From positions 1 to 64,000 of the IMG/VR virus record IMGVR_UViG_3300010885_025649: 64,000 nucleotides of DNA, one strand, 5' to 3'. The position numbers were made by a program, and so were the translations under genes. The notes under the pieces were generated by a model. That model did not search any database and had not been told where the DNA came from. It was given only the letters and a program-made list of their open reading frames with translations. Positions 12,401 to 53,662 of the stretch are shown here, piece by piece (position 1 is the first letter of the stretch; each line of letters begins with the position of its first letter).

Positions 12401-15400
12401 CAATTGTTTCTACAAGATGCTAGTAACAAAAGTATATCTGCAGACTTATCAACAAACTTAAATACTAATGATAGAGAGGTAAGATCACTAAGGGGATTCT
12501 TTGGTAAAGAATCTAGTGCGCTTGGAGAAAAGATAGCTTTATTAGGAGCTGAAAATAAATTAGCTCTTAGAGGATTAGCTGGATTAAAGTTATTAGGAAT
12601 GACACTACCACTTACTTTAGTAGGATTAGCTTTAGGAGATCAACCAGGAAACTCTTTAACTACAGCTACTACAATGTTATTTGATCAACTACAAAACGGA
12701 CCATCTCTATATGGATCTAAGCTATTAGGAGGTCTAGCAAAAGTAGGTGGAATTAATCAAGACTATTTTACTGGAGGTGTTAAACCCGCATTAGGGTTTA
12801 GTTTAAATCCATTTTATTTAAAGAGAGCAGGCATCGCCACAAATCCTAATGGAACTCCTTTAATGTATTCCGATGGTACCTATCAGTATGTAGATAAAGG
12901 AAGAGACTGGAAAGAAGATCTGCAATTAACTGGGCAATTATCTTTAGAAATTGGTGGAGGTCTTTTAGCTTATAATGCTATTAAACATGGAGTAGGATTA
13001 GCTACTGATTTAGCAGATTTAAAAGCAGGAGGTACTCGCAGCTTAGAAAGAATTATTGGGAGTAGATTAAATAGATTAGCTGGAGAAACTGTATTACCCG
13101 CATTAGCCTTACTTACCTTTGGAGCCGTAGATACGGCTGTGGATAGTCTAGTACAAAAGGTAAGTCCTTATGGAGTTAACTATGGCATGTCCTTTATGTT
13201 ACTTAGTGGTGTTGCTGGAGCAGGTATAGGAGCCGTATTTAATAAAGATTCAGGGCGTATTAAAGCAGGTGCTAAAGGGGCAGTTGGTGGATTATTACTG
13301 GGTGCGGTAGCAACCATGATTGCAGAGTTTGCTACTACATTAGGTGTAGATGCAATTAGAGGTGCCGCTGGATTAATCTCTGGAAGACCTATAGATGATG
13401 CAGTAATGAATAATACTGTAGAAGGTTCTCTAAGAAATACTTATAGATATGCTTTAAGTATTGGAGATATGGCAGGAGCTATTAGAGCTAGAGCAGAAAT
13501 GCAAAGTATGGGATTCTATATAGATAATTCTAATAGTAGATTAAGTCATTCTATAGCTACACAGTTAGGAACAACTCCGGTAGCACAAAATGCTATCTCT
13601 TTAAATATAGATAATAGTGGAGCAGTCATACCTACTCTTAGTTTCCAATTACCTTTATTAGGCTTTGGAGTTAATTTAGAATCACCTGTAAAGTTTGCCT
13701 TTAGATCTAACCAACAATTATTATTAGCTAGGGATCCAGATCAGAATTATAGTAAGGTATATGAAGGTGGTTTAGTATTACCACAACAATTAGGAATGCC
13801 TAATATGTTAGGTATGGGATTAGGAGCCATTGCTGGTATAGCAGCTAAAGGAGCCTTTACTAGATTCGGATTACCAGCAATAGTTCCAATGGCTCTTGGA
13901 GGACTTATTGGAGGATTTGGATTTAATGCTTATAACAGCCTTACTAATAAAGATAAACCAAAACAAGGAAGTCTAAGTATTGAATACAATTCTGGTAATG
14001 ATTTAGAGAAGTTAATGTTAGGTTATACAGCAATAGCTCCTATATTAGTAAGCAGTCAATTAATCAGTGGTGCTTTTATCAACACGGGTATTGGATTAGC
14101 TAATAGTTCCACAAATGAACTAGTACAAAAAGCTGGAGGTACTCTAATAGGTTTAGGATATAAAATAAGTACTAATCCTATAGTTAGCGCTGCTCGAATG
14201 ATGGGAGGGCACGCTAATAATTTAGTAGGTGGACAATGGGGATTATTTAATAATACTTATGGATTAATTAATAGAGACCGAGGAATTCCAGTTATCCCAT
14301 TAAATGATAAATTACCCGGGGGTAAAATTCCAGAAAGGTCCGTAACACATTTACCAGCATTCTTAGTAAAAGGTATAGGTAAAACAGTTAAGTATGCAGC
14401 AGCTTATATGTTATTATCTAACATGTTTGATTTAAATAAGACTATACCTTTAGGAAATGGTAATACAATACCCACATTATTTAGTCCTACAGCAGCCTTA
14501 ATTACAGGAACTTATGCTAGCTTAAAATACGGTCCTAGATTATTACCAGAAGGTAGTATAAAAGAGTTTGCTAATATTATTGGTGGAAGTAGAAGTAGAG
14601 CATTAACCTCTATGTTCGCTGTTATAGGGGCAACAGCATTATATACTTTAAGTGCACAAACCACAAATGGAATTCCAACACCAAGAAAGTCTGTAGCAGC
14701 ATTAAATAACATTGCAAGTATTCCTTTTATAGGAAACCCTCTAGCTAAGATAACTGACTTCTTCTATGGAGTTAGTAGAAATGCATCTATACAAGATAGA
14801 TACACAGTTATCCCTACAGTATTTGGAGGAATTCGTACAGGAACAAATACCAATTCATTACTTACCGGAGATTTTGGAAGTCCTATTGTAAGAAAGCGTG
14901 GTGGTGCTGGTCTTATTACTTCTGATATAACCACAGCATTAAGTTCAGGATCTTTTAGTGGATTATTATATTTAGGTGCTGCCCAGAACACTACATTAAC
15001 TATTACAGGTAATCAAGGATCTAGTTTTACTAAAATGGGCAATTACACATTACCCAGAAATAGCTATGTGCAGATGATTTTCCAAGGAGCAGATTTATCT
15101 TATGCCTATAACTTATTACCCAGCGGAGATAAAGCACAAAAACAAAGAGCATTAGCTAGATTTAATGTAATCAAAAATGCTGGCCCTAATCCTAAGAACA
15201 TATTAAAGGCATTAAATACGCAACGCCCCGGATTCAGTCAGCAAGATTATAGAACTAGTTCCCCATTATTTAGTTCAGCTACTTTAAAAGCAGTTCATTC
15301 TGAGTTAATATTAGCTGCATTAAAACAGCGGCAATTTGTCACTGAATATATCTTAAAGAATCCTTCTGAGGATATCACAAGTTATTTAGATAGTTTAGGT

Positions 15401-18400
15401 GTAGATAAAATGCTTAATGGGATAGGTGCTTTAAGTAAGCAAGTCATCCTACCTGTGCGCGGTAACTTCTACTGGAACAGAACTGCTGTAGGAGGCCCTG
15501 TAGGAGCCGGCCCAACAGGACATCCCTATTTTATTGGTGGTGGGGAAGTAGATACCAGTGCTCAATTAACCTTACAGAACTTTAATTATAATAGTTTACA
15601 AACTGTACAAAATGCCGCGGCTAATGATAAAGCATTAACTATATTTAATCTTGGATTAATAAGTCTTAGTGGATTAATATTAGCAGGACCTTTACTGGGT
15701 AATCTATTTACTAATGCCTCTAGAAGAACAAATATTGATAGATACGTGGCTGAAGGTGGTGGTCAGCGTTCTATGATTAACATAGGAGCTTATAATACAG
15801 AGCGGGGAGGCAACCAATTATTAGCAAAAGTAGCCTTATCTGGTGCTGGGGATAGTAATCTGGGTACTTTAGCTTATCTTGGGGGCTTACCTATTTATCA
15901 TACTGATGTTATACCAGGTAGTTATAAAACCGCATATGACAACGTTTCAAAGAATATATCAGAATTATATGTGGGAGACGCGCAACGAAAGCTTAATACT
16001 ATAGACAGAAATAACATCGCTTCAGTTAAAGAGTTTGCTGAATTAATCCATGGAAAGCTAACAGACTTACGTAACTCAATGTTCACAGGCTCTGAGAATA
16101 TTACGAATGAATTAAACGCACGGCCGGATATTGTAGCTAAATTTGATCCACATAGAGATAGAAATAGATTAGCTAAAATATCTGAATTAGATAAAGTATT
16201 AGCCGGATTACGAGCTGATATAGATTCCGCAGTAGATCCGCATAGATTATTAGAAAAGACTCTAAGCCGTAGAGAGCCATTTAGAGATGTAAGTGCTGCG
16301 GGGGTATTTAAACTGATGGGCTTTGAAGTAGACCCGGGTGGTAATACTTTAGCCAGAATGGCTACATGGTTTGGAGAACGAATTCCAGGAGCTAAAAGTA
16401 TATATGATTTTATCCGCCCTAATAAATTAACCAAGGCAGCTAGAGCAGAAGATCCTCTAAGACTACACACTATGAGTAGTGCAGAATCTGATCGGATATT
16501 AAACGGTTTAGGTGTTAAAGAAAGCGAGCGGATTAAAGCTAGTATCTTTACAGATGTGGAAAATCAAGTAGCCGGGAAAACCGCATTAAGGATTATGGGA
16601 AGTACTGGTGCAGGTGTTATTGGAACCTTACAGAACTTAGCTATTACAAGTATGTTCTTAGATGTTGGGGATAGTAGGCGCAGTATGGTTTATAGAGAAA
16701 ACCAAGCAACAACAGCGCTTGAAACCACTTCTTTATTCTTAGGTACTCATATGGCTACTCAAGTATTAACTACTGGAGGAAAAGCCGCATATGAATTAGC
16801 TACTACTGGAACAATGAATAGAGTAGGATTAGTCGCTATGTTTGCCAACCCTGAAGTAAGTTGGCTCCCCGGCCTTTTTATAGCCGGTGCCACCATGTTT
16901 GGTCCAACAGTATTAGACTGGATGGATCATATGGGTGTACCCGGGATTAAAGGCTTCAAACAAGGTGTAGGAAGTAATCTAGAACGTGCTGCTAATTGGG
17001 CAGATAAAGGATTAAATACTAACCAAAGTGTAGGGAGTACTTCTTTAGGATTCGCGGCATTAACAGCCTTAACTATCTTTACTGCAGGTGGAGGTTTCAT
17101 TGCTGCGGGAGTGGCCGGAGGTGTAGTTGCAGCCGCTAACTCTTTAGCTAATAAAGGTACTAAGGCTACCCCTGCCCAACAATTAGCTAATACTCTTCAA
17201 GCAATACAGAATATTCCTGGAATTGGTCCTAATGTTATAAGACCTATATGGGAAAAAGCTAATGACTTATTTGAGAGTACTTATCAAACTTTAGCAAATC
17301 AAATTAGAGGAGGCTTACAAGCAGATCCTAAGAGTTTCTGGTGGGGTGTTGCTGAAGGAATAGTAGAAGGTTCTTCTGGAAGAAATCTATTTGAGGATAG
17401 AACTAAAATAAACAGTGCTCAGAGTATGTTCTTAAGTGGTTATTATAGAGGTTCTCCACTATTCAGTGTTAATAATAGAGACTATAAAGCTTTAGGATAT
17501 GACGCTAACTACCAGAAGTTCCTAGCAGATACACATGAGCAGGAACAAAGTAGATTAAACACAGACACATTAATTAGCACAAGAATATTACACAAGACTG
17601 TATTAAACGGTATAGCATATTCTGGAGATTATCAAGATGAAGTCTTTGCTAATAGATTAATGGGAGGAAGTCAAGGAAGAATCTTTACTAAAGGTAGTAG
17701 AGCTATAGATAATCTATTAATGCTTTCTATTACTAGTAGAGCAGAAGATACTCAATGGGTATTTGGATCTGTATATAACCGAGCTGTAGAAAGAGAAACT
17801 ATTAAGAATAGTGGTGTAGCTATAGGAGCTATGCTACTACCTACATTAGGTGCTATGGCTACGCTAGGTGGTGCTGGCTATATAGCCAGCAGAGCAGCTA
17901 AGCGAGGTCGTCCACCAAGTTCAGGAGGTCTTACTGAACCTGAGGCACCAAAACCTAATCTACCTGATCCACCTAATCAAGGAGTTCTATTAGAAGAGAG
18001 GCCTGCATCACAAAGAAGAGTATTAACTCAAGCGGAGCAAACTCATGACTTCTTAATATGGCGTAATGAAACTGCTGAAGGTAAAATTGCATATAAGAAT
18101 CATGGCGTACATGCTAGGGGTATATATAATAAATTATATGGAGTTACGGGGCATCAATCTAGTGAGGCTTATGTAAAACCTTTAATGGGTAATGAGGCCC
18201 AGCATGATTATAGGCTATGGTTACAAACTGCTGAAGGTAAAGCCGCCACTATAGAAGGCAAAGGTAGTTTTGATGATTACTTTGACTTGTTTGGATTTAA
18301 AGGTCATCAACCTAAACCTAGTCCACAACCAGTAATACAAAATAAGTTAAATCCAGAGCAGTACTTAGAGTCAGCAAAGCTTGCAGCTACTCGCCCCTCA

Positions 18401-21400
18401 GTTCAAGGTCCTGCAAAGAATCCTACAACTAGTCCATTAAGCACTCCTACTGCTCCATTAGCAGCGCCTATTAGTACTCCTGTAGCACCAGTAGTTAATC
18501 AATTACAGCCGCCAAGTGATGTCACAACAACTCCTTTAACACTAGAAACAACTCCACATACACCAATCACTAATAGAAGATCATACACTTTGGGAGAGCA
18601 TACACAAGGATTAGGAGGTTTAGTACTCGGGGTAGGTTTAGTTGCTACTGCTTGGTCTTTTAGAGAAGCTCAAATGACTAACTTTAAAGACACAGATGCT
18701 GATACAAATCTCTTTATTAGTTCAGCAGGAGTAGCAACACAACTTCTGGGAGGTAAAGCAGGAGTAATTGGTAATACCATTTTAGGTATAGGTATGATTG
18801 GACTACAAGCTAAAGTTGCTGCAGAGAACCAATGGAAGAATCAAGAAGCTAATGCAAATGTAGTAGGAATTGGAAGTAATATATTAGGTAACTTAGCTGG
18901 ATTTACTGCTTTAAGTGCAGTGGCAGAAGGTTTAGGAGGAGTAGCTGGTATAGCTGCAGGAGTGGGAGCAACAACAGGATTAGCAGCAGCAGCCGTCCCA
19001 ATAGCAATTGGTGCAGCAATATTAGGCGGCGCCGCACTTATAGGGGCAACAGCAGAGTGGATTGGAAAAGGAATATATAATAATGTAACCAAACCACAGC
19101 CCGTATCACAGGTCTCAAAACCAGTTACAGTTAGTAATAAATATGTTAATGTGGCCCCTGTATATAAAAATCCAGTTAGTAATAATATACAAGTAGATAA
19201 AACCAATACTGATTATATTAGTGTATATCATTCTAATAGAAGCCCAGTAAGTACAAGAGTGCATTTAGCTAATACTGGTAGTCCACCTATTAGTGATTAT
19301 GTTGGTATGTATCATTCTAATAGAAGTCCTATAAGTAGTAAATTAAGTCTACCTAAACCTGTTCCACATATAGCAGAGTATGTAAGTAAGTACTCGTCTA
19401 GTAGAAGTCCTATTAGTAGTAAACTGCCTTTAACTAAAGTTACTAGTTCACCAATTATCAAATATCAATCTACTAGAAACCCAACCAGTACTAGAATAAA
19501 TCTATCAAATCCTATTAGCAGTTTTATTGATAGACCAGCTCACTTTAATAATCTTAATCCCGCTGAATATGTAAGTAAATATGTATCAAATAGAAGTCCT
19601 ATTAGTACTAAAATTAATCAACACAAAACTAATACTTTAGGTTCAGTTAGTAATACAAAACATATTAATACCAATCCATATTATGCAGTGATTGCTCATG
19701 TAGATGATGATAGAATAAATAGTAATCTTATAGATACAAGACAACTAACATCTTTAAACCAACTTAAGGAAACTTTAGTTAGTATCAAACATAAAGCTAA
19801 TGGACAACATGTAATATTAGATTTAGATACTCATGGTATAGAAGGAAGAGGCTTCGCATTTACAAAAACTGCGCATGGTAAGACTACAGTTAGCGCAATG
19901 TCTGCTAAATATCTTAATAGACAATTGTATGAAGCTGGGTTTAAGAAAGATGACATCACAGTTATTTTAGAAACTTGTAATGCTTATTTCTCTTATAATA
20001 GTTCAAAGAGTGGATTCAAAGCTACTTCAAAAAGTGATATTGAAAAAGCAGAATCTAGAATAAATTCTAGTAAAGCTACAGCTACCTTATTAGACACTAA
20101 TAAAGAAACACCCATAGAGTATAAAATGTATGGGCGCCGGTCAGGTAATTACGAATACTTAGCATTAGCACAATATGTAGGAAATGTAGAATTACAGGGT
20201 CCAGCTAATAGAACAGAGATTGTTGAAGTGCATGGAAATTATAAAGGCTCTGTAGATACCAACTATCCACTGACGTTCCTAAATATACACGATCAAATAA
20301 TCGCAAGTATAAATTCAAACTATATTGAACAATATCCTTCTGGCAGAAGCCCTGTAAGCACAAAGCACAGTAAAAATATATTCCAAAATATCTTTGAGTT
20401 CTTCTTCGGTAAGCCTGTTGCAGCAGATACTTTAAAGGATCCAAGTAATTGGTTAACTAATAGTCAATACACAGCATTAACCAAAACTGCAGGCGCTAGT
20501 AAATTAGAGCAGAGAGTTAATAAGAGTCTACCTGCATTAAATACTAAAGGAACGCCTCTACAAAGTATTCAGAAGAAACCTAATACATTAGACTATATAC
20601 AATCCGCTACTATGAACTTCTTTGATCAGATAAAAGAAGACTTTAATTATATTCTAAATAGAGTTGGTAGTGGTTTAAATAAAATAGGTAATGGAATTGG
20701 CCATGCTATTTCTAATTCAGTAGATGGTATTGGAAAACTATTCGGCAAAAGCTCACAAACCTTTGACCAACAATCCCCAACGTTAATGGCAAATCTTATG
20801 AGAGATTTCAGTCTCACAAAGGAACAAGCCGCGGGAATAGTAGGTAACTTAGGTCATGAGTCTGCGGGGTTACAAGCAGGTATACATCACATTGGATCTA
20901 CAAGCAGTAATGCGGGTATAGGTTGGGCACAATGGGTTGGACCCAGACGTAAAGCCTTTGAGCAATACTTAACTATGACCAATCAAAAGGCTACTGATGC
21001 AAATGCCAATTACGGCTTCTTAAAGCAGGAATTAATGGGGCAATACAGAAGTGCCATTAAAGAAGTCAGAAAGCAATCTACCGTACACAACTCCATGGTT
21101 GTATTCGAGAAGATTTACGAAGGGGCTGGTATAAAGAATTATGCTAGCAGAGAAAGATATGCTAACCGCGCTTTAGCTACATTGGGTAGTATATCTACCA
21201 CAGCAACAGTTAGTAATAATTCAGAAGCACTATTCCCTATAGTTGGGTACAGCTCTTTAACAGCTCCTGTAAGAGGTCAATTTGGTACCCAGAGGCCCGG
21301 GCATGTACACCAAGGTACTGATTATGGTATCCCAGTAGGAACAGGCCTTGTAGCCCCATTAAACGCCACTGTAAGTGAAGCCGGAAGTAATTCCAGTATG

Positions 21401-22201
21401 GGTACTTACATTAGATTAAAAGCATTAGATAATTCCGGTAGAGCTATTAAATATACCTTTATGCACTTATCTCAACTAGATGTACATAAGGGTGAACAAG
21501 TAGTAGCAGGACAGGAAATAGGTAAAAGTGGTAACTCCGGACATAGTACAGGAGCACACGTCCATATAGAAGTACAGCAAGGTAACTTGAATATAGATCC
21601 GGCAGCATATTTTGGTAAGCGCGCTGGAGTAAGTAAAGTAGCACAAGTTGTGCCTAAAGGGGAAACAAAGACTAGTAATAGTAACCAAACCCAAAGTGCT
21701 ATTGATCCTTATACCGGACAGTATAGAGGAGAAGTATATGATGGAAATACTTTAAACAGTATTAAAAGATATGTACCAACCGGTAGAGGCTATAAGTTAG
21801 ATATCCTTAATGGTTCTGAAGTAGTAGTTATAACAGATGCTAATAATAATACACAGCATCAGCATATTAATTTAGATATGAAACCTAAAGTTAATATGAG
21901 TGTAATGTCACCCACTATAGTAAGTCCAGTTAAAGCTACTCCTATAACCCCTACTAAGAAGAATAAAGTAAAGACTACTATTAAAGTAGTAGTTACACCA
22001 ACTTGTTATAAGGAGGAGATGATTAGTAGAGGGCAGATACAATTAGATACAGCTAAATCTCCTACTCCAATAAGTCATAGTGCTAAGGCTGTCATAGTAG
22101 TAAATAAAGATGGAAAGGCCAATCAAGTTATGCATGAAGAAAGAGCCACTGAATTAACAATGGCTCAATGCGGGATCCCCAATTTTCAATACAGAGCTTA
22201 A
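9473..22201 (+). CDS. giant (4242 aa) tape-measure/ejection-type virion protein with PLD-like, multi-TM, putative clan-CD protease, phage lysozyme-2 and M23 peptidase domains
   Basis: HIK at 9788 and LHAN at 10268 in a PLD-fold context. Many Gly/Ala hydrophobic helices. VILDLDTHG...VILETCN. QAAGIVGNLGHES...GWAQW (lysozyme-2 family). HQGTDYG...FMHL...STGAHVH (M23). Confidence 0.8.
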   Translation: MASTNEQLRALGITGEVYNTSSRSSVLFTSRGTSTKAFDRLLTNGNKITNVLQYHINPTGALGGKLVNNATNIYRANDYNSRRHPDSRIKQVPNYIEGPTRDSYTHIKLYGGTKTSMFSTSGAGGGNTQDFGEESEINLNYISPKLNNLERTFVKDYLSGNAKDQYHDKDIALYYQDYKTPGISTEEAKLINAAQKGDTINIGSATLSSNSIVGAALEAALARGAQVNIATTVDGSNTTTTARTLSHYSNLGATVFPTNVDGVILHANFLGIKYKNKPEVSLITSFRASAKAQSTYGETQTNLAIELHGAEASSINKYINSVLFKPGNGQAPSAVGIGNRLAELGNSNYLSALVNMSDAVNVLYTIQADISGDLLTRYYSANQQGLTGRARQIYLTQPIFTGEPVAEQLYYVTRGSAAPSYVKVLDTIRSSPTIYNAINGFVNQAVRPKDETAFGAFAFGFLGGQGGFFKGNENPILSILAAPARGIDNLFRTQRAPFNNGVYGALIAGSIGSITAGVIVRQRFNNNLGFIAGALIGGSIGAAMNQTPSNMFSTPGVKLMALNKANKGDLQDTNAPGPAESLIGNLFNSVQSVGLSALMYGIQSRIAPLVMDYIFQSSATTAALMNNISEDLSKMPPGTSNVSKFFRSIGVFGAKSVGLVNTIGNLNSIRRGIAIGNLGLYGSFARDLFGLDMLVQLNRPIGNATGNYTHGVEVYHKIGAENPGVLIRPGDDFRGKLDPILDKGYNIQLSTVSRDPEILRQYGRGIFRESSSSGLLGRVNKKVIAEALNTILDLNSRIHLKDGTFGLAHTTYGRAFGTVDQELTGDLNTRLNTDIESFIKTHHPTATVLEIAEIKRRIIFGNEVEINGNKVRAPTYQYLTEAGIDNIDRLFGYYRQGMNILGAIYVNPMIFALGNKPKDTSLTIKDLLAAIQEGTSNVFGLPLNLFDNDDKLKALFKSNNDEGPLKYFSSKGKAITQLFLQDASNKSISADLSTNLNTNDREVRSLRGFFGKESSALGEKIALLGAENKLALRGLAGLKLLGMTLPLTLVGLALGDQPGNSLTTATTMLFDQLQNGPSLYGSKLLGGLAKVGGINQDYFTGGVKPALGFSLNPFYLKRAGIATNPNGTPLMYSDGTYQYVDKGRDWKEDLQLTGQLSLEIGGGLLAYNAIKHGVGLATDLADLKAGGTRSLERIIGSRLNRLAGETVLPALALLTFGAVDTAVDSLVQKVSPYGVNYGMSFMLLSGVAGAGIGAVFNKDSGRIKAGAKGAVGGLLLGAVATMIAEFATTLGVDAIRGAAGLISGRPIDDAVMNNTVEGSLRNTYRYALSIGDMAGAIRARAEMQSMGFYIDNSNSRLSHSIATQLGTTPVAQNAISLNIDNSGAVIPTLSFQLPLLGFGVNLESPVKFAFRSNQQLLLARDPDQNYSKVYEGGLVLPQQLGMPNMLGMGLGAIAGIAAKGAFTRFGLPAIVPMALGGLIGGFGFNAYNSLTNKDKPKQGSLSIEYNSGNDLEKLMLGYTAIAPILVSSQLISGAFINTGIGLANSSTNELVQKAGGTLIGLGYKISTNPIVSAARMMGGHANNLVGGQWGLFNNTYGLINRDRGIPVIPLNDKLPGGKIPERSVTHLPAFLVKGIGKTVKYAAAYMLLSNMFDLNKTIPLGNGNTIPTLFSPTAALITGTYASLKYGPRLLPEGSIKEFANIIGGSRSRALTSMFAVIGATALYTLSAQTTNGIPTPRKSVAALNNIASIPFIGNPLAKITDFFYGVSRNASIQDRYTVIPTVFGGIRTGTNTNSLLTGDFGSPIVRKRGGAGLITSDITTALSSGSFSGLLYLGAAQNTTLTITGNQGSSFTKMGNYTLPRNSYVQMIFQGADLSYAYNLLPSGDKAQKQRALARFNVIKNAGPNPKNILKALNTQRPGFSQQDYRTSSPLFSSATLKAVHSELILAALKQRQFVTEYILKNPSEDITSYLDSLGVDKMLNGIGALSKQVILPVRGNFYWNRTAVGGPVGAGPTGHPYFIGGGEVDTSAQLTLQNFNYNSLQTVQNAAANDKALTIFNLGLISLSGLILAGPLLGNLFTNASRRTNIDRYVAEGGGQRSMINIGAYNTERGGNQLLAKVALSGAGDSNLGTLAYLGGLPIYHTDVIPGSYKTAYDNVSKNISELYVGDAQRKLNTIDRNNIASVKEFAELIHGKLTDLRNSMFTGSENITNELNARPDIVAKFDPHRDRNRLAKISELDKVLAGLRADIDSAVDPHRLLEKTLSRREPFRDVSAAGVFKLMGFEVDPGGNTLARMATWFGERIPGAKSIYDFIRPNKLTKAARAEDPLRLHTMSSAESDRILNGLGVKESERIKASIFTDVENQVAGKTALRIMGSTGAGVIGTLQNLAITSMFLDVGDSRRSMVYRENQATTALETTSLFLGTHMATQVLTTGGKAAYELATTGTMNRVGLVAMFANPEVSWLPGLFIAGATMFGPTVLDWMDHMGVPGIKGFKQGVGSNLERAANWADKGLNTNQSVGSTSLGFAALTALTIFTAGGGFIAAGVAGGVVAAANSLANKGTKATPAQQLANTLQAIQNIPGIGPNVIRPIWEKANDLFESTYQTLANQIRGGLQADPKSFWWGVAEGIVEGSSGRNLFEDRTKINSAQSMFLSGYYRGSPLFSVNNRDYKALGYDANYQKFLADTHEQEQSRLNTDTLISTRILHKTVLNGIAYSGDYQDEVFANRLMGGSQGRIFTKGSRAIDNLLMLSITSRAEDTQWVFGSVYNRAVERETIKNSGVAIGAMLLPTLGAMATLGGAGYIASRAAKRGRPPSSGGLTEPEAPKPNLPDPPNQGVLLEERPASQRRVLTQAEQTHDFLIWRNETAEGKIAYKNHGVHARGIYNKLYGVTGHQSSEAYVKPLMGNEAQHDYRLWLQTAEGKAATIEGKGSFDDYFDLFGFKGHQPKPSPQPVIQNKLNPEQYLESAKLAATRPSVQGPAKNPTTSPLSTPTAPLAAPISTPVAPVVNQLQPPSDVTTTPLTLETTPHTPITNRRSYTLGEHTQGLGGLVLGVGLVATAWSFREAQMTNFKDTDADTNLFISSAGVATQLLGGKAGVIGNTILGIGMIGLQAKVAAENQWKNQEANANVVGIGSNILGNLAGFTALSAVAEGLGGVAGIAAGVGATTGLAAAAVPIAIGAAILGGAALIGATAEWIGKGIYNNVTKPQPVSQVSKPVTVSNKYVNVAPVYKNPVSNNIQVDKTNTDYISVYHSNRSPVSTRVHLANTGSPPISDYVGMYHSNRSPISSKLSLPKPVPHIAEYVSKYSSSRSPISSKLPLTKVTSSPIIKYQSTRNPTSTRINLSNPISSFIDRPAHFNNLNPAEYVSKYVSNRSPISTKINQHKTNTLGSVSNTKHINTNPYYAVIAHVDDDRINSNLIDTRQLTSLNQLKETLVSIKHKANGQHVILDLDTHGIEGRGFAFTKTAHGKTTVSAMSAKYLNRQLYEAGFKKDDITVILETCNAYFSYNSSKSGFKATSKSDIEKAESRINSSKATATLLDTNKETPIEYKMYGRRSGNYEYLALAQYVGNVELQGPANRTEIVEVHGNYKGSVDTNYPLTFLNIHDQIIASINSNYIEQYPSGRSPVSTKHSKNIFQNIFEFFFGKPVAADTLKDPSNWLTNSQYTALTKTAGASKLEQRVNKSLPALNTKGTPLQSIQKKPNTLDYIQSATMNFFDQIKEDFNYILNRVGSGLNKIGNGIGHAISNSVDGIGKLFGKSSQTFDQQSPTLMANLMRDFSLTKEQAAGIVGNLGHESAGLQAGIHHIGSTSSNAGIGWAQWVGPRRKAFEQYLTMTNQKATDANANYGFLKQELMGQYRSAIKEVRKQSTVHNSMVVFEKIYEGAGIKNYASRERYANRALATLGSISTTATVSNNSEALFPIVGYSSLTAPVRGQFGTQRPGHVHQGTDYGIPVGTGLVAPLNATVSEAGSNSSMGTYIRLKALDNSGRAIKYTFMHLSQLDVHKGEQVVAGQEIGKSGNSGHSTGAHVHIEVQQGNLNIDPAAYFGKRAGVSKVAQVVPKGETKTSNSNQTQSAIDPYTGQYRGEVYDGNTLNSIKRYVPTGRGYKLDILNGSEVVVITDANNNTQHQHINLDMKPKVNMSVMSPTIVSPVKATPITPTKKNKVKTTIKVVVTPTCYKEEMISRGQIQLDTAKSPTPISHSAKAVIVVNKDGKANQVMHEERATELTMAQCGIPNFQYRA
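19226..20365 (+). repeat. six copies of an 11-aa repeat Y-x-S-x-R-[SN]-P-[IVT]-S-[ST]-[KR] inside the giant protein
   Basis: In-frame copies start at 19226, 19310, 19391, 19463, 19580 and 20333. Confidence 0.9.
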
Positions 22202-48591: not shown

Positions 48592-49092
48592 TTAATTAAA
48601 CTCCGAAGTGCGTGGATCTTGTGTAGCTAAATTAGCTAATACAGAATTGTAACTACTTAAGACTTTATGTAAGTCTTTAGTTTCTTTCATATAATCAAAG
48701 AGACTATTAGTAAGTTCTAAATCCTCATAAAACTTAGATAATTGAAAGAAAGCTTTAATTCGATTAGGGCTAAATTTATACATAAGCAATAATTTAGTAT
48801 CGGATAAATAAGTAGTCTTAGCAAAATCACTTGAAGTTAATAACTCAAGATTTAATTCCGCCATAAAATTCAACAAAGTATTTACAACTTCAAAGTTATT
48901 ACTATCAACTGCAGTAAAATCCTCAAGTAATAATTCCACTAATATCTTAGAGCTACACATAAATAAAAGGACAGAGCAGTTCTCTGTTGTAACTGTAACA
49001 ATAGTCCCATCTAAATTAGGTGTAGCTGTAGCAGATTCCAATCCTAAAACCCCTATAAAAGTTTTAGCAAATGACATTAAAGAATGATTCAT
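48592..49092 (-). CDS. hypothetical protein (likely start ATG 49092)
   Basis: ATG 1 nt after the polA stop; 166 aa. Confidence 0.55.
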   Translation of the reverse strand: MNHSLMSFAKTFIGVLGLESATATPNLDGTIVTVTTENCSVLLFMCSSKILVELLLEDFTAVDSNNFEVVNTLLNFMAELNLELLTSSDFAKTTYLSDTKLLLMYKFSPNRIKAFFQLSKFYEDLELTNSLFDYMKETKDLHKVLSSYNSVLANLATQDPRTSEFN

Positions 49093-49093
49093 G

Positions 49094-52000
49094 TTAGTGT
49101 TCCCAATAAGTATTACAGCCAAATTCCGACGCGCCTTTAACAACATTATTCATTAGTGCCGTCGCAACTATTTCCATCATATTCTTTATTCTATAAATAT
49201 GTTTACTAGCTTCTGTATCATAGACAAAGCTTTTATAAGTATTAGATTTCTTATTATAGCTACAATTGATTATGGATTCCGGACTATAAACACTTTCATA
49301 TTTGTTAGTATCAATAGTTAAATTCCCAGGGATCTCGAATATTAATTCATCATGAACTTGCAGGATTAATGAATTAGGAAACTCTTTAGATATTTCTATC
49401 ATAGCTTCCTTAATTTGTTCTGCAGCAAAGGATTGAATAGGTGCATTTACTCCTTGTCGTCTACAAGCATTAGCATCAGATTTACCAACACTAGCATCAT
49501 TAACAAATCTGATTCTACCCTCTGCATTAACCGCATAATAGGTTAAGCCAGCAAACTCCATCTTATCAGCAATCCAAGATTTAAGTACCGGGAATGGATC
49601 AAAGTAATTATTAATAATTATTTCAGCATCTCTAACAGCTTTACGTTGTGCTAACTTTTCTCCAAAGCCTTTATCTACATATGTTTTAGCCAAGTTAAAA
49701 TCTTTAGCTAAACCATCTGCTCCTTTAGCATAGATTTGCCCTAAGCCAATAATTTTAGCTAGATCTCGCAAAGACTTATTATAAATAGGATGAATATGCG
49801 CCGCGGCTATAGGTTTTAATTCATTAAAGGTCCAGTTAGGATTATTAAAGAACTCAGGATAGTTATGATGGAAGACATCTTTAAACATTAAATATGCAGT
49901 CATAGTATGTGCATCCTGCCCTGAGTTCTGAATACGAATCATCTCAGGATCATTAGACATAAATGCCGCGATTCTAATTTCTTGACTAGATAAATCGACA
50001 CTCAGTAATAATTTGTTAGGCGGCGAGACAAATATGTGTCTATAGTTCTTCTCTTTACCATCTAAAGGATCTATCAGTTTTACTTTACTTATTTGTTGCA
50101 TGTTCTTAACTACCCTTACTTATTCTTACGTAAGGGAATGGACTATATCATAATCTTACATGCTTTCTTGTATCTTTTATACTTTCTTTCAATTCCCCAA
50201 CCATCATAATCTTTATATAACCAATTACATAAAGTATAAGTGTCTTTTTTATTACTTCTAAATCCTGGATATTTTCTAGTCTTATTATCTCTATAAATGT
50301 AATCTTTCTTTAAATTTACATCTAAAGTTTTATTCAATAACAATATAAGACCTTCTATAAAAGTTTCACTACCACAATAAATCCTAACTTCATTACTACG
50401 TATTGAGCCATCCCCATCTATAACCCCTCTAATGTAATATCTTAAACATTCAGGGTCATAAAAAGTAGTTGGCATGCTACAAGTAAAGGTTTTATTGTTA
50501 TGTAAATTGTAATGTAAACTTAAATAGTTACGTAAGTATTTTCCAGTTAGCGTAATATCATAATTATAACTATTAAACTTAGACACATAGTAACTTTTAA
50601 TATCTCTATTAAAGTAACTGCCTAACTTAATAATTATATCCTTATCTTTTTCATGTAATCTTAAAGATACCCGGTTGCCTCTATCATCAATAAAACCATC
50701 AGTAACTAATAAACCACAATAATAATTAAATACAGGATTAGTATAATCAACTTTAGTAGTATCCCAGCTAACAGGTACTATTGGTTTATGACTAATGATA
50801 TCATTAATTTTTAGTAGACATTTTATTGCACCTGGAGTTCTATTAGCTATTTTAGATATTTGAGTTGGAGTCAAATTATCATTAACATATAAATTAATAA
50901 TATTATCTTTTTCTTCTTTAGTATAAAATCTACCTTTTGGCATTATAAGACTCTCTGCGCTCAAGATTATTTCATCTTATTAATATGTCTATATTTTAAC
51001 ACACATTAACTTAGATTACTATAATTAGTCTCTAGACGTTCCTAAAGTTTCCTTGTAGGCTTCGCTTGGTATTGGCCCATTTATAAAGAAAGGCGTTCAC
51101 CGAGTTCACAGAGTTTTCATATAATATCACTACTATATGCCCCCACTTAACAAAGGGTTGTTTGAACTAAATCTCAGTTGTTATCTTATAGGCTCTTTAT
51201 CCTATAATTCTTAAGGTTTTCCATCCCTTAAGGTCAGAGTACCTCTTTAACTATTAGTATAGTTAAACCTTGTTCTTGGATATTTCATCATATGTATTAT
51301 AACATACACTTAGACTACTTTATCTACTCGTTACACACGTTTATTAATATTTCTATTAACACTGGCTAGGGATTCCCCATAAATATGTGGAGGGGTTCCC
51401 CTAATTAAAGGTTTTTACACTACAGAATCACTTCTATATGGGGCAGATATGTTTACCCGTGCTTGTTCCCAATTGATCAAAGTTACTATGCACTCTACCG
51501 GTAACAGGATTAATATAGATTTCATAATCAGTACCAATCTGTTTACGCAGAATAGATAGCTCACTAAAAGTCTTTAGCATTAAATAAATATTAGATTCTT
51601 GTTTAAACTTAATTAGATTTAATTCCGCTTCTAAATCTTCTTCTTCATCATCTTCAGTAAAATTATCTTCTTGATTAATATAATCATTTGATGATTTAAA
51701 TACCGCCAATAATTCTTGTATAACTTTCTTACTAGTATTCTCTACATCAAGACCTATAAGATTAAGTAATGATTTCATCTTAATAGGATTACTAAATAGT
51801 TTAGAATCCAAAATAATAAATTCACCCAATAAATTAACCTTAAATTTAATAAAAGACTCTGGTTCTGTAATTCCTTCTTGAATATCTTTAGCCAGTTTTA
51901 GTTGATTTATTCTAACAGCAAGTTCATATTGAATCTGTGGAATTCTATTTATAGCAACTTGGCGTAATCTTTTATACAAAGGTAAATCTAATAAGACCCC

Positions 52001-52693
52001 TTTAAGTTCCATGTCTGCAACTTTAGGTAATAGTTTATTCTCACGAATAAGAATCTTACCCATACCATAACCACCAGAACCAAAAGGTAAACTAATAGTT
52101 TCTTCTAAAGTTTCCTTTAATCTATGAAGATGAATAACATCTTCAGCAGCATATTGTAATTGTTCTATTGTTAAATCCGGTTCGGCCCAATTACTAACCT
52201 GTTGTGTCTTATCTAAATATATTCCATATAACTGCCGTAGAATACCTTTAAGGCCATCTCCATGAGTTCTTATTAAAGATACCCCGCTAGCATTTGCTAT
52301 TAGTTTAACGGCTAAATAACAATCAAATACGTTAGCTAAATTAATATCACAATTAACCTTAAGCATTTTATAATCGAACTTAATATTATAACCTATAGAA
52401 GTAACCGCAGGAGATTCTAATAAAGCTTTAAGTTCTATAACATCTGGTAGATATAAGATATCAAATATAAAACAATTAGCTGGAGTAGCTATTTGCAGTA
52501 GTCTAACTTTATTAGTATAAGGATCAGTAAAAGAAATACGTTTACCTGATTTTATAGTAGCGTCTAATCTATTATGCCACTGTAAATAGATAGGATTACT
52601 ATAAGTTTCCACATCAATACTAAGGAATTTATATTTCTGTAATTCTGAAATAGCTAAATAATAATCCGAATTCTTTTCTTTAATGTATAGCAT
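49094..52693 (-). CDS. polA: family A DNA polymerase, spliced join(52693..51455, 51174..51154, 50104..49094), 756 aa
   Basis: Exon 1 holds the 3'-5' exonuclease (DVET, YNIKFD, YAAED) and ends GTSTG. Exon 2 is RFSSNNP. Exon 3 has NMQQI..DLSSQEIR, LRDLAK..GQIY, QVHDE. The join restores TGRFSSNNPNMQQI in frame. Confidence 0.93.
50105..51153 (-). mobile_element. group I intron 2 in polA (1049 nt, with homing endonuclease ORF)
   Basis: P1 CCCU/GGGG with U-G. P7 AGAGACUA / GAUAUAGUCC. P8 AGUCUUAUA/UGUAAGAUU enclosing the ORF. Terminal G at 50105. P10 UGUU/AACA. Confidence 0.93.
50143..50943 (-). CDS. intron-encoded double-motif LAGLIDADG homing endonuclease with N-terminal HTH
   Basis: YYCGLLVTDG and YIRGVIDGDG. 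Likely ATG at 50943, right after the P8 5' strand; the stop lies inside the P7 3' strand. Confidence 0.88.
   Translation of the reverse strand: MPKGRFYTKEEKDNIINLYVNDNLTPTQISKIANRTPGAIKCLLKINDIISHKPIVPVSWDTTKVDYTNPVFNYYCGLLVTDGFIDDRGNRVSLRLHEKDKDIIIKLGSYFNRDIKSYYVSKFNSYNYDITLTGKYLRNYLSLHYNLHNNKTFTCSMPTTFYDPECLRYYIRGVIDGDGSIRSNEVRIYCGSETFIEGLILLLNKTLDVNLKKDYIYRDNKTRKYPGFRSNKKDTYTLCNWLYKDYDGWGIERKYKRYKKACKIMI
51175..51454 (-). mobile_element. group I intron 1 in polA (280 nt, no ORF)
   Basis: 5' exon ends in U. P1 GGGU/GCCC with U-G. P3 AAACCUU/AAGGUUU. P7 GAGUA/UACUC. P8 hairpin UUUAACUAU-ACUA-AUAGUUAAA. Terminal G at 51175. P10 AUCU/AGAU. Confidence 0.9.
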
Positions 52694-52977
52694 TATTTAA
52701 CCATGAACATAATATTTAGTATACTTCCATCTTTAGCTTTATTAATATTACACCAATAAGAATCAGTATAGATAATCTCAACAGTTCCTACTTTATAAAG
52801 TGTTCTTGTAGATAATTCAATAACAATTAATTTATTAGAGTTAGCGAAAATAACATTATAAAAGGGGATACATTGTACCCCCAAGATTGTTTTTAATATA
52901 GTTACATTTAATAATTTATGTTGATAGACTCCAATATAAAGACCATCAACAAGTTTATAAATATCATTACTTATCAT
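52693..52977 (-). CDS. hypothetical protein
   Basis: 94 aa, coupled to phoH and polA. Confidence 0.5.
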   Translation of the reverse strand: MISNDIYKLVDGLYIGVYQHKLLNVTILKTILGVQCIPFYNVIFANSNKLIVIELSTRTLYKVGTVEIIYTDSYWCNINKAKDGSILNIMFMVK

Positions 52978-53662
52978 ACCTATTTAATATTTCTCCTATA
53001 ATTCCATTTCTAACAACATCAGCTTTAGTAAACTCAAACAAGCCAATGCCAGGAATTCCCCTAAGTCTCTTCAACGCATCTTCCAATCCCGAATAGTTAT
53101 TACCCCGCATTTCCATTTGATTAACATCACCAGCTAATACCATCTTAGCACTATCGCCCAGTCTTGTAAGGAGTTTAAGGAAATCATCTGGAGTAGTATT
53201 TTGTACTTCTTCACAAATAACAAAGCAATGATTTAAGGAACGCCCCCGAACTAATTCAGGAGCGATAATCTCAATCTTATTATTGAGCCAATATTCAGCT
53301 TTACCTAAATCCATCATGACTAACAAGTTGTCTAAAATAGGACCAAGAAACGGAGACATCTTTTCATCAGCAGTGCCGGGTAAAAATCCCAATCTATTTT
53401 CTACTAAAGGTCTAATAATAACAATACGTTCTACTCCTGTTTTAGATCTGTGTTGTACATATCTAATTGCTTGATATAGTGCTGTTAGAGTTTTACCAGT
53501 TCCAGCAGGGCCTTGACAAATTGTATAGGTGTTACTATCAATAACTTCTATATATTCGCGTTGCGCTGGAGTAATGTGTAACGTGATATCACTTTCAGAC
53601 CTAACTTCGGAACTTAACTGAGATTTCTTAGCCATATATAGTATACCTAAAGGATATACCAT
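52967..53662 (-). CDS. phoH: PhoH-family ATPase
   Basis: GPAGTGKT, LGFLPG, RGRSL, EEVQN, LTRLG, GDVNQ, DVVR. Confidence 0.95.
   Translation of the reverse strand: MVYPLGILYMAKKSQLSSEVRSESDITLHITPAQREYIEVIDSNTYTICQGPAGTGKTLTALYQAIRYVQHRSKTGVERIVIIRPLVENRLGFLPGTADEKMSPFLGPILDNLLVMMDLGKAEYWLNNKIEIIAPELVRGRSLNHCFVICEEVQNTTPDDFLKLLTRLGDSAKMVLAGDVNQMEMRGNNYSGLEDALKRLRGIPGIGLFEFTKADVVRNGIIGEILNRYDK

What the first reader, a model, noticed from the sequence alone, without database searches (positions are those of the whole stretch)
49094..52693. DNA polymerase split by two back-to-back group I introns around a 21-nt micro-exon carrying a conserved catalytic-region motif
Seen: the 419-aa and 335-aa ORFs are halves of one PolA, but neither contains the conserved TGRxSSxxPN motif. 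The missing residues RFSSNNP are encoded by AGATTTAGTTCAAACAACCCT at 51174..51154, invisible to ORF calling. Both flanking segments have group I hallmarks: U-G at the 5' splice site in P1, P3/P7/P8 helices, terminal G, and P10 with the next exon. The micro-exon is used twice: its first 4 nt form P10 of intron 1 and its last 4 nt form P1 of intron 2. Known: multi-intron phage genes exist, and this Arg corresponds to the conserved Pol I TGRLSS Arg. Inference: because the exon is 21 nt, skipping it stays in frame and would give a polymerase-impaired but exonuclease-intact protein. Unspliced RNA gives a 419-aa exonuclease fragment. Splicing could therefore gate replication.
Basis: partly seen in the sequence, partly recalled or inferred. 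Interest (0 to 1): 0.88.

Follow-up and report, generated by a model that had tools for sequence, protein, structure and literature searches.

The report
Twin group I introns split phage polymerase
The DNA polymerase gene of an uncultivated 212-kb phage is cut by two self-splicing-type (group I) introns only 21 bases apart, so seven essential amino acids sit on a tiny exon that gene finders miss; this is a clean new example of an arrangement already known from other phages.

Summary
On the minus strand, a family A DNA polymerase gene reads exon 1 (52693-51455), intron 1 (51454-51175, 280 nt), a 21-nt micro-exon (51174-51154, RFSSNNP), intron 2 (51153-50105, 1049 nt, with a LAGLIDADG endonuclease gene) and exon 3 (50104-49094). 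A profile of PolA homologues lacks exactly seven positions between the two large ORFs. The micro-exon fills them and is the best-scoring 7-mer in the whole six-frame window.

Both intervening sequences can be drawn as group I introns with P1-P10, a U.G pair at the 5' splice site and a terminal G. Rfam gives only sub-threshold hits, but their nearest relatives pass the threshold. A model built only from other phages' introns hits intron 1 at E 2e-14.

Intron 2 sits at the Pro|Asn site that Bastille-type introns occupy in two Bacillus phage polymerase genes. The closest precedent is phage Twort orf142, where two similar introns flank a 23-nt exon.

The guide sequences and core helices of the two introns do not match each other, which favours inclusion of the micro-exon.

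Verdict: real, a new member of a known kind, of moderate interest.

The parts
51455..52693 (-). polA exon 1 (413 codons): 3'-5' exonuclease domain plus the N-terminal part of the polymerase domain. It ends ...FDQLGTSTG.
   Evidence: Pfam PF01612 and PF00476 positions 63-119 ending at residue 413; phrog_17 alignment ends at residue 413; Exo motifs DVE, NIKFD and YAAED are visible in the translation.
51175..51454 (-). Intron 1: a 280-nt ORF-less group I intron of IA type. P1 GGGU/GCCC (51458-51455 / 51444-41); P10 guide AUCU 51448-45; P2 51438-32/51427-21; P3 51412-08/51271-67; P4 51403-399/51371-67; P5 51395-92/51378-75; P6 51360-54/51349-43 (GAAA loop); P7 51329-25/51241-37; P7.2 51308-02/51295-89; P8 51264-59/51254-49; P9 51232-26/51216-10; P9.1 51207-01/51192-86. 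Terminal G at 51175. In-frame UAG six codons into the intron.
   Evidence: Rfam RF00028 28.7 bits, E 6e-5; helices verified by script; RNAalifold with Streptococcus phage TerL introns gives 15 compensatory pairs; blastn to introns of split phage genes; model R1 gives 73.5 bits, E 2.4e-14.
51154..51174 (-). 21-nt micro-exon AGAUUUAGUUCAAACAACCCU = RFSSNNP. From my own knowledge it corresponds to E. coli Pol I R668-P674. Its first 4 nt pair in P10 of intron 1 and its last 4 nt in P1 of intron 2.
   Evidence: Alignment; PSSM rank 1 of 74,677; HMM gap of exactly 7 positions and +35 bits on inclusion.
50105..51153 (-). Intron 2: a 1049-nt group I intron of IA type with an endonuclease ORF in the P8 loop. 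P1 CCCU/GGGG (51157-54 / 51144-41); P2 51137-31/51126-20; P3 51113-09/50957-53; P4 51103-099/51070-66 (one C.A mismatch); P5 51094-91/51078-75; P6 51059-52/51047-41 (GAAA loop); P7 51030-26/50145-41; P8 50952-40/50163-52; J8/7-P7' GAUAUAGUC 50149-41; P9 50136-30/50119-13. Terminal G at 50105. In-frame UAG seven codons into the intron.
   Evidence: Rfam RF00028 26.6 bits, E 2.5e-4, starting at the 5' splice site; helices verified; local similarity z 11.4 to gut-phage PolA intron L018A, which scores 76.5 bits on Rfam; same Pro|Asn site as introns of Bacillus phages Eyuki and phiNIT1.
50143..50943 (-). Intron-encoded LAGLIDADG homing endonuclease gene: 266 aa from the ATG at 50943, or 273 aa from the TTG at 50964. 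It has an N-terminal HTH-like region and two LAGLIDADG-type motifs. The start codon lies in the 5' strand of P8. The stop codon UAG is the first three bases of the P7 3' strand.
   Evidence: Pfam PF14528 E 2e-8; phrog_4645 endonuclease E 1.8e-25; PDB 2dch putative homing endonuclease E 2.9e-5; homologue in gut-phage scaffold L018, tblastn E 5e-9; positions.
49094..50104 (-). polA exon 3 (336 codons plus stop). It starts NMQQISK and contains motif A (VDLSSQEIR), motif B (RDLAKIIGLGQIYAKG) and motif C (QVHDEL).
   Evidence: Pfam PF00476 E 7e-37; phrog_17 E 1e-39; translation.
51171..51272 (-). 3' domain of intron 1 (P3'-P8-J8/7-P7'-P9-P9.1-GAUAACA tail-terminal G). This module is shared with many phage group I introns.
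   Evidence: Model R1 was built from seven other phages' introns only. This is its single significant hit in the 64-kb window. In the 14-member alignment, 98.9% of cells are paired, 12 of 14 pairs have compensatory changes, and 0 of 500 shuffles reach the observed values.

Best explanation
One family A DNA polymerase gene (756 codons when spliced) of an AT-rich phage is interrupted in its most conserved motif, T-G-R-[LF]-S-S-x-x-P-N-[LM]-Q, by two independent group I introns of the IA type that lie 21 nt apart.

How splicing would work (inferred):
- Each intron folds on its own. It pairs its internal guide with the last four exon bases upstream (GGGU for intron 1, CCCU for intron 2, each ending in a U.G wobble). 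It is attacked by free guanosine and then ligates the exons after its terminal G.
- The 21-nt micro-exon is long enough to serve at once as the 3' exon of intron 1 (P10, first 4 nt) and the 5' exon of intron 2 (P1, last 4 nt).
- Splicing of both introns restores ...GTSTG-RFSSNNP-NMQQISK... and a complete polymerase.
- Stop codons six and seven codons into the introns keep ribosomes out of the ribozyme cores.

How the introns are likely to move (inferred):
- Intron 2 carries a LAGLIDADG homing endonuclease gene in its P8 loop. It occupies the Pro|Asn site also used by Bastille-type introns of Bacillus phage polymerase genes. It is therefore most likely a mobile homing element.
- Intron 1 has no endonuclease gene and lies within easy co-conversion distance (21 bp), so it can hitch-hike on intron 2's homing.

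Shown here: the gene structure, the RNA helices, homology to bona fide introns, and restoration of the protein profile. Inferred: actual self-splicing, homing, hitch-hiking, and constitutive inclusion of the micro-exon.
For: - Gene structure: the profile gap of exactly 7 positions is filled by the micro-exon. All exonuclease and polymerase catalytic motifs are intact, so the gene is under selection.
- RNA, Rfam: Intron_gpI hits start at both predicted 5' splice sites (E 6e-5 and 2.5e-4).
- RNA, helices: P1-P10 are verified for both introns and for two relatives, with different sequences in each helix. For example, P1 is GGGU/GCCC, CCCU/GGGG or CCUU/GAGG; P3 is ACCUU/AAGGU, CUCUG/CAGAG or CUGUG/CACAG; P7 is GAGUA/UACUC or GACUA/UAGUC.
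- RNA, covariation: RNAalifold recovers P1, P2, P6, the long-range P7, P8, P9 and P9.1 with 15 compensatory pairs.
- Relatives pass the Rfam gathering score of 50: L018A 76.5 bits, Streptococcus phage TerL intron 53.8 bits, giant-virus Hsp70 intron 51.6 bits.
- Similarity z-scores: intron 1 to the TerL intron 24, intron 1 to the Hsp70 intron 19, intron 2 to L018A 11.4.
- Independent model R1 hits intron 1 at 73.5 bits, E 2.4e-14. Family covariation: 0 of 500 shuffles reach the observed values.
- The blastn relatives whose surroundings were inspected lie between two annotated pieces of one gene or in an unannotated gap just upstream of a CDS: TerL, the DNA polymerase next to I-BasI, the capsid gene and a tail gene.
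- Same insertion site as Eyuki and phiNIT1.
- The endonuclease is identified by Pfam, PHROG and PDB matches.
- A second, independent assembly that is 99.98% identical carries the same structure.
- No terminator-like site on the minus strand between 52864 and 48987.
Against: - No transcript or biochemical data exist, so splicing is inferred.
- Both introns score below the Rfam gathering threshold (28.7 and 26.6 bits against 50). They are missed in scans of 22 kb and 64 kb.
- No diverged relative of this particular polymerase exists in the databases searched. Neither an intronless allele nor conservation of the micro-exon across relatives could therefore be shown.
- P1 helices are only 4 bp.
- In intron 2, P4 has a C.A mismatch, and P10 (AACA/UGUU) is separated from P1 by 4 nt.
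- Homing and hitch-hiking are inference only.
Confidence: 0.85

Rival explanations
1. Regulated or alternative splicing. The two introns act as a switch. Unspliced RNA gives a 419-aa exonuclease fragment. Exon skipping (ACGGGT|AACATG, in frame) gives a 749-aa protein that lacks the primer-binding Arg. Only full splicing gives active polymerase, so splicing gates replication.
For: - Skipping is in frame, and the unspliced ORF is 419 aa.
- Exon skipping by paired group I introns is documented across a 23-nt exon in Twort orf142, across a 34-nt exon in Coxiella 23S rRNA, and in a gene of Bacillus phage SIOphi (PMC10136302; PMC11878797).
- A 'molecular on-switch' role for phage introns has been proposed (PMC11878797).
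Against: - The two introns are not near-copies of each other (local alignment z only 3.5).
- A hybrid ribozyme is disfavoured. The P3 5' strand of intron 1 against the P3 3' strand of intron 2 gives 2 of 5 pairs. P7 gives 4 of 5 pairs.
- Intron 2's guide GGGG against the exon-1 end GGGU gives 1 of 4 pairs. Intron 1's P10 guide AUCU against the exon-3 start AACA gives 1 of 4 pairs (strands).
- Differentiated splice-site recognition elements were reported to select exon inclusion (PMC10136302).
- No expression data exist.
Confidence: 0.1
2. No splicing: a split or decaying polymerase. The two ORFs are made as separate polypeptides, or the gene is a pseudogene. The intervening DNA is a free-standing endonuclease gene plus spacer, and the RFSSNNP codons are a relic.
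For: - Gene callers see two ORFs, and the C-terminal ORF has its own ATG at 50101.
- Rfam hits are below threshold.
Against: - The seven missing residues are preserved in frame, in the right order and on the right strand. They are delimited by U.G/P1 on one side and by a terminal G on the other.
- All other catalytic motifs are intact.
- Both spacers are homologous to bona fide introns.
- The same site carries an intron next to an I-BasI gene in Eyuki. The Bastille polymerase intron is experimentally spliced (PMC11878797).
Confidence: 0.04
3. Real group I introns, but at least one is not autocatalytic. It would need a phage or host protein (a maturase-like action of the LAGLIDADG protein, or an RNA chaperone) or ongoing translation to splice.
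For: - Low Rfam scores, very AT-rich helices, 4-bp P1 helices and a C.A mismatch in P4 of intron 2.
- Half of the Bastillevirinae introns tested spliced only in infected cells (PMC11878797).
Against: - All core helices and the J8/7-P7 consensus are present.
- The closest relatives score as canonical introns.
- The sequence contains nothing that specifically points to dependence on a protein.
Confidence: 0.2

Closest known systems
Staphylococcus phage Twort orf142, introns 2 and 3 (Landthaler and Shub 1999, as summarised in PMC10136302)
   Same: Two IA-type group I introns in one phage protein gene are separated by a very short internal exon (23 nt there, 21 nt here). That exon must serve both as 3' exon of the first intron and as 5' exon of the second.
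   Different: The Twort introns are highly similar to each other and show exon skipping. Here the two introns are only distantly alike (z 3.5) and have non-matching guides and P3 strands. The gene here is polA rather than a tail tube gene. The exon length is a multiple of three and encodes catalytic-site residues.
Group I introns of Bacillus phage DNA polymerase genes (SPO1/SP82/Bastille type, seen here in Eyuki next to an I-BasI gene and in phiNIT1)
   Same: Same gene family and, for intron 2, the same insertion point: after the Pro codon and before the Asn codon of SSxxP|N[LM]Q. Intron 1 shares the 3' domain (P9, the P9.1 GAUAAAGAGCC loop, the GAUAACA tail) with the Eyuki intron. Polymerase genes with two or three introns are reported in Bastillevirinae (PMC11878797).
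   Different: Those introns encode HNH nicking endonucleases (phiNIT1 also has a LAGLIDADG gene). Here there is a LAGLIDADG gene in P8. No intron at the Gly|Arg position 21 nt upstream was seen in Eyuki or phiNIT1. The polymerase itself is below 30% identical to theirs.
Group I intron in the terminase large-subunit gene of Streptococcus thermophilus phages (P7571, P4761, CHPC1042; left unannotated in the records)
   Same: This is the closest RNA relative of intron 1. It is ORF-less and of about 300 nt. It has the same start (GGGU|AAACA...GCCCC), a GUGA-capped P2, the same P7-P7.1 sequence, and the same P9, P9.1 and tail. P10 lies directly next to P1. It scores 53.8 bits on Rfam.
   Different: Different host gene and phage family. 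It is a single intron, with no micro-exon.
PolA of gut-phage scaffold MT839691.1 (L018)
   Same: A family A polymerase interrupted in the same motif by an ORF-less group I intron (76.5 bits). A second intervening sequence roughly 50 nt downstream carries a homologue of the LAGLIDADG gene found here. The 5' half of its intron A is the closest relative of intron 2 (z 11.4).
   Different: Intron A is inserted after PNL|Q, 6 nt downstream of the intron 2 site. The internal exon is longer. The second element is frameshifted and its borders are unresolved.
Mini-exons between organellar group I/II introns, and the 34-nt exon between two introns in Coxiella 23S rRNA
   Same: Very short exons flanked by self-splicing introns are invisible to ORF and alignment tools. 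They are recovered by searching for missing conserved residues (PMC10352661; PMC10136302).
   Different: Those are organellar or bacterial rRNA genes. None is a phage polymerase.

Membership tests
Group I intron | P1 helix formed by the 5' exon end and an internal guide sequence, with a U.G wobble at the 5' splice site | tested here: met
   Intron 1: GGGU/GCCC. Intron 2: CCCU/GGGG. Each ends in U.G. The guide covaries with the exon in relatives (CCUU/GAGG in L018A).
Group I intron | Terminal guanosine at the 3' splice site, with exon ligation restoring the reading frame | tested here: met
   G at 51175 and G at 50105. The join gives an uninterrupted 756-aa PolA.
Group I intron | Conserved catalytic core: the P3-P7-P8 and P4-P5-P6 domains, a long-range P7 with a bulged base, and the J8/7 strand | tested here: met
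   All helices are complementary in both introns. P7 was found independently by RNAalifold with a G-C to C-G exchange. J8/7-P7' of intron 2 is GAUAUAGUC, as in the family consensus.
Group I intron | Score against the curated Rfam model RF00028 (gathering score 50 bits) | tested here: inconclusive
   28.7 and 26.6 bits (E 6e-5 and 2.5e-4 in a 1.5-kb scan). Both are below the gathering score and are missed in larger scans. The nearest relatives score 51.6-76.5 bits. The family-specific model R1 gives intron 1 73.5 bits.
Group I intron | Guanosine-dependent self-splicing | not testable with these tools
   This needs in vitro transcription and splicing, or RNA reads.
Subgroup IA group I introns | Extra hairpins (P7.1/P7.2) between the 5' strand of P7 and the 3' strand of P3 | tested here: met
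   There are 53 nt (intron 1) and 68 nt (intron 2) between P7 and P3', each with a 7-bp P7.2 hairpin. P7.1 could not be fixed. No subgroup-specific models were available, so IA2 against IA3 remains undecided.
LAGLIDADG homing endonuclease | LAGLIDADG domain(s), with the gene located inside an intron loop | tested here: met
   Pfam PF14528 E 2e-8; phrog_4645 E 1.8e-25; PDB 2dch E 2.9e-5. Two motif-like segments (LLVTDGFIDD, VIDGDGSI) are visible. The ORF is enclosed by P8. Cleavage activity was not tested.
Family A DNA polymerase (Pol I type) | 3'-5' exonuclease motifs ExoI-III, the TGRLSS-PNLQN motif, and motifs A, B and C in one polypeptide | tested here: met
   Pfam and PHROG hits. The motifs are visible in the translations. 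The TGR...PN motif is complete only after both splices.

The most novel reading that the evidence does not exclude
The 21-nt micro-exon acts as a regulatory cassette. The relative rates of the two splicing reactions, or occasional skipping of the in-frame exon, set the ratio of active polymerase to an exonuclease-proficient, polymerase-dead isoform (or the 419-aa exonuclease fragment). Ribozyme folding or GTP supply would then time the onset of phage DNA replication.
Probability: 0.07. Interest if true: 0.7.

Novelty: new member of a known kind. Interest (0 to 1): 0.36.

Why it matters
- Annotation: the polymerase of this phage is called as two unrelated-looking ORFs plus an endonuclease. Neither large ORF carries the residues of the seven-codon exon, including the Arg that, from my own knowledge, corresponds to the primer-terminus-contacting R668 of E. 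coli Pol I. Recognising such micro-exons is needed for correct phage gene models. The Streptococcus phage TerL introns and the capsid-gene introns met on the way are likewise unannotated in public records.
- Biology: about 30 nt that encode the TGRLSSxxPNLQ motif of family A polymerases hold three different intron insertion points. These are Gly|Arg (this phage), Pro|Asn (this phage and the Eyuki and phiNIT1 Bacillus phages) and Leu|Gln (a gut phage). The motif looks like a repeatedly colonised homing target.
- An ORF-less intron 21 bp from an endonuclease-bearing intron is a good natural case for testing hitch-hiking by co-conversion.
- It does not change what is known about how group I introns work.

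Tried and rejected
- Rfam at the gathering threshold on the whole window: no hit.
- Rfam E-value mode on the whole 64 kb and on three tiles of about 21 kb: the two introns are not recovered even in their own tile. These negative scans say nothing about other introns in the window.
- Search for close relatives of the polymerase, to find intronless or diverged alleles. The searches were cultured phages, IMG/VR, 1.84 billion protein representatives and JGI metagenomes. Only the same phage turned up (self, plus a 99.98% identical second assembly). Cross-relative conservation of the micro-exon could therefore not be tested.
- DNA pattern from the P7.1-P7.2 region in IMG/VR. Three hits were coding-sequence coincidences. 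One was a real relative, an intron in a giant-virus MAG Hsp70 gene.
- Motif scan of the window for more members of this intron family. The one candidate, near 27253 on the plus strand, lies inside a minus-strand ORF and was rejected. A weak R1 hit at 40046-39947 (E 0.36) lies inside an ORF and was rejected.
- My first impression that the two introns are duplicates of each other was rejected. The local alignment z-score is only 3.5, against 11-24 to their respective outside relatives.
- The Rfam alignment placed P7' of intron 2 before the ORF, and ended intron 1 at 51211. Both placements were rejected in favour of P7' at 50145-41 (exact J8/7 consensus) and the terminal G at 51175 (frame, P10, and the conserved P9.1 and tail).
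- The T7-like (K1F) polymerase intron was checked as a possible same-site relative. It sits in motif C (VH|DE), not in this motif.
- Three older papers (PMC22036, PMC529087, PMC162337) are not held in the library.
The exon join was made only inside a script.


Full report
**What is there**

The window is part of IMGVR_UViG_3300010885_025649, a 212-kb contig at 34% G+C. On the minus strand, a 419-aa ORF (52693-51434) and a 335-aa ORF (50101-49094) flank a 273-aa ORF.

- The first ORF has the Pol I-type 3'-5' exonuclease domain and the beginning of the DNA_pol_A profile. That match ends at residue 413.
- The second ORF has the rest of DNA_pol_A.
- PHROG family 17 (DNA polymerase) aligns the N piece up to residue 413 and the C piece immediately after it.
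- The six residues after 413 (KHICPI) and the stop are therefore not polymerase sequence.

**The micro-exon**

- Exon 1 ends ...FDQLGTSTG and exon 3 begins NMQQISK.
- The 21 nt at 51174-51154 read RFSSNNP in frame with both.
- Added as three separate fragments to an alignment of 13 homologues, the pieces tile the motif TG / R[LF]SSxxP / N[LM]Q with no overlap or gap.
- An HMM of those homologues is covered at positions 100-423 by exon 1 and at 431-660 by exon 3, so exactly seven positions are missing.
- The three-exon join, made only inside the script, aligns as one domain at 313.4 bits. Without the micro-exon it scores 278.0 bits.
- A position matrix from 140 homologues ranks RFSSNNP first of 74,677 heptapeptides in the six-frame translation of the whole window (18.1 bits; the runner-up scores 8.6).
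- All other catalytic motifs (ExoI-III and motifs A, B, C) are intact in the translations, so the gene is not decaying.

**Are the spacers group I introns?**

Rfam finds nothing at its gathering score. In a 1.5-kb scan, RF00028 matches 51464-51210 (28.7 bits, E 6e-5) and 51163-50955 (26.6 bits, E 2.5e-4). Each match begins with the P1 strand at the predicted 5' splice site. These hits are fragile and vanish in scans of 22 kb and 64 kb, so I looked for independent evidence.

1. All canonical helices can be written for both introns and were checked by script:
   - P1 has a U.G pair at the splice site.
   - P2 is capped by a GNRA loop.
   - P3, P4, P5 and P6 (GAAA loop) are present.
   - P7 is long-range with a bulged base.
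   - A P7.2 hairpin lies between P7 and P3', which marks the IA type.
   - P8 and P9 are present, plus P9.1 in intron 1, and both introns end in a terminal G.
2. Intron 1 has DNA-level relatives in 147 phage records. The matches listed fall mostly under no annotated feature. The ones whose surroundings I inspected lie between two annotated pieces of one gene or just upstream of a CDS:
   - the terminase large subunit of Streptococcus thermophilus phages;
   - the DNA polymerase of Bacillus phage Eyuki, next to I-BasI;
   - a capsid gene with 'intron associated endonuclease' genes;
   - Clostridium phage tail genes.
3. RNAalifold on intron 1 plus three Streptococcus TerL introns recovers P1, P2, P6, P7, P7.2, P8, P9 and P9.1, with 15 pairs kept through changes on both sides.
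4. The relatives are canonical by Rfam's own cut-off:
   - the TerL intron scores 53.8 bits;
   - a giant-virus Hsp70 intron found by pattern search scores 51.6 bits;
   - intron A of a gut-phage PolA (MT839691.1) scores 76.5 bits.
5. Local-alignment z-scores against dinucleotide shuffles are 24 (intron 1 to TerL), 19 (intron 1 to the Hsp70 intron) and 11.4 (intron 2 5' core to the gut-phage intron). The two window introns score only 3.5 against each other. They belong to the same class but are not recent copies.
6. A covariance model was built only from the 3' domains of seven introns of other phages.
   - It hits the 64-kb window once, at 51272-51171, with 73.5 bits and E 2.4e-14.
   - In the 14-member alignment it gathers, P9 and P9.1 are paired in 98.9% of cells. 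Twelve of 14 pairs carry compensatory changes, and no shuffle of 500 reaches the observed values.
   - This also fixes the 3' end of intron 1 at the G of 51175, not at 51211 where the Rfam alignment stopped.

**Details of intron 2**

- The endonuclease ORF sits in the P8 loop. The 5' strand of P8 (50952-50940) contains the ATG at 50943, and the 3' strand (50163-50152) lies at the end of the ORF.
- The ORF's UAG stop is the first three bases of the P7 3' strand (UAGUC, 50145-50141). It is preceded by the consensus J8/7 sequence GAUA.
- The protein is a LAGLIDADG enzyme (Pfam PF14528, phrog_4645, PDB 2dch).
- P10 for intron 2 (AACA/UGUU) exists but is separated from P1 by 4 nt. P10 of intron 1 (AGAU/AUCU) abuts P1, as in the TerL intron (AAGUG/CACUU).
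- Both introns have an in-frame UAG in the conserved CAUAUAG of P2, six and seven codons after the splice site.

**Insertion sites**

- In Bacillus phage Eyuki the upstream polymerase exon ends ...TSRLSSAGP and the downstream exon starts NLQNLP.
- In phiNIT1 the exons read ...TRLSSRDP and NLQQIP, with a LAGLIDADG gene and an HNH gene between them.
- Intron 2 therefore occupies the same Pro|Asn position that introns occupy in those two phages. From memory of Landthaler and Shub 2003, the SPO1, SP82 and Bastille introns share one insertion site. I did not check that here.
- Intron 1 sits 21 nt upstream, at Gly|Arg.
- The gut-phage intron A sits 6 nt downstream of the intron 2 site, at Leu|Gln.
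- The T7-like K1F polymerase intron is elsewhere, in motif C.
- This polymerase motif is thus a repeatedly colonised target.

**Mechanism**

The most likely reading is two independent self-splicing introns whose removal includes the micro-exon and yields a 756-aa polymerase. Intron 2 is probably mobile through its endonuclease. Intron 1, with no ORF and only 21 bp away, could spread by co-conversion. That last point is inference.

- Twort orf142 has a 23-nt exon between two highly similar IA2 introns, and that exon can be skipped.
- Coxiella 23S rRNA has a 34-nt exon that can be skipped (PMC10136302).
- Bacillus phage SIOphi skips an internal exon (PMC11878797 names the terminase gene in its Results and the polymerase gene in its Discussion).
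- An 'on-switch' idea has been voiced for phage introns (PMC11878797).

Here, however, the elements that would allow skipping do not match (strands):
- Intron 1's P3 5' strand against intron 2's P3 3' strand gives 2 of 5 pairs.
- Intron 2's guide against the end of exon 1 gives 1 of 4 pairs.
- Intron 1's P10 guide against the start of exon 3 gives 1 of 4 pairs.

Differentiated recognition elements were reported to favour inclusion. Skipping and gating remain possible but have no support in the sequence.

**Limits**

- There are no RNA data.
- There are no diverged relatives of this polymerase. The only other copy is a 99.98% identical second assembly with identical introns.
- No subgroup-specific intron models were available.
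- No terminator-like site interrupts the unit on the minus strand.

**Verdict**

The structural interpretation is supported and the regulatory interpretation is not. This is a new member of a known kind: multi-intron phage genes with a micro-exon.

Noticed in passing
L018 (MT839691.1) 1336-2740: In the gut-phage PolA, the stretch after intron A holds a short exon (QNIPSHTKEIRLMFTAG...) and then an intervening sequence with a frameshifted LAGLIDADG gene. The sequence then reads ...NVFVGADFS-TAG-TTG-QQEPR, so six extra bases including a stop codon lie inside motif A (DFSQQEPR expected). This could be an assembly error, decay or recoding; it is unresolved. Rfam reported no second intron there at E up to 0.1.
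   Followed up: partly
L004 (IMGVR_UViG_GVMAG-S-1096103-95_000001) 9710-11200: A giant-virus MAG Hsp70 (DnaK-like) gene is interrupted after ...IFDCGG by a group I intron. The intron scores 51.6 bits on Rfam, and model R1 hits its 3' domain at 11104-11198 with 68.1 bits. It carries an ORF, and its P7-P7.2 region is nearly identical to that of window intron 1. This points to a phage-type intron family shared with a eukaryotic giant virus.
   Followed up: partly
L010, L012, L013 (Streptococcus phages P7571, P4761, CHPC1042), about 1199-1495 in L010: The terminase large-subunit gene is annotated as two separate CDS with an unannotated gap of about 300 nt. The gap is a canonical group I intron (53.8 bits) with P1 GGGU/GCCC and P10 AAGUG/CACUU. 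At least 60 S. thermophilus phage records share it.
   Followed up: partly
L015 (bajarodcaudo virus 1) 285-386, 1474-1575, 2899-2995: Model R1 finds three intron 3' domains in one major capsid protein gene, which is annotated in four pieces with two 'intron associated endonuclease' genes. This is another multi-intron phage gene with short internal exons.
   Followed up: no
window 9473-22201 (+): A single 4242-aa ORF, the largest in the window. It was not examined.
   Followed up: no
window 50940-50952 and 50141-50163 (-): The start codon of the intron-encoded endonuclease lies inside the 5' strand of P8, and its stop codon lies inside the 3' strand of P7. Translation of the endonuclease and folding of the ribozyme should therefore exclude each other.
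   Followed up: partly
window 42000-64000: Method note. Rfam cmscan in E-value mode finds the two introns in a 1.5-kb scan but not in scans of 22 kb or 64 kb of the same sequence. AT-rich phage introns of this type will be missed by routine whole-contig scans.
   Followed up: yes
window 48592-49146 (-) and 52693-52977 (-): The ORF downstream of polA overlaps its last 53 nt. The 94-aa ORF upstream ends at the polA start codon, and a PhoH-like gene lies further upstream (52967-53662). The 184-aa and 365-aa ORFs downstream have no Pfam or PHROG match.
   Followed up: no
L021 (Bacillus phage phiNIT1) 15463-17233: A LAGLIDADG gene and an HNH (I-HmuI-like) gene both lie between the same Pro|Asn exon junction of the polymerase gene. 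They could be two side-by-side or nested introns with little or no exon between them. I did not resolve the internal borders.
   Followed up: no
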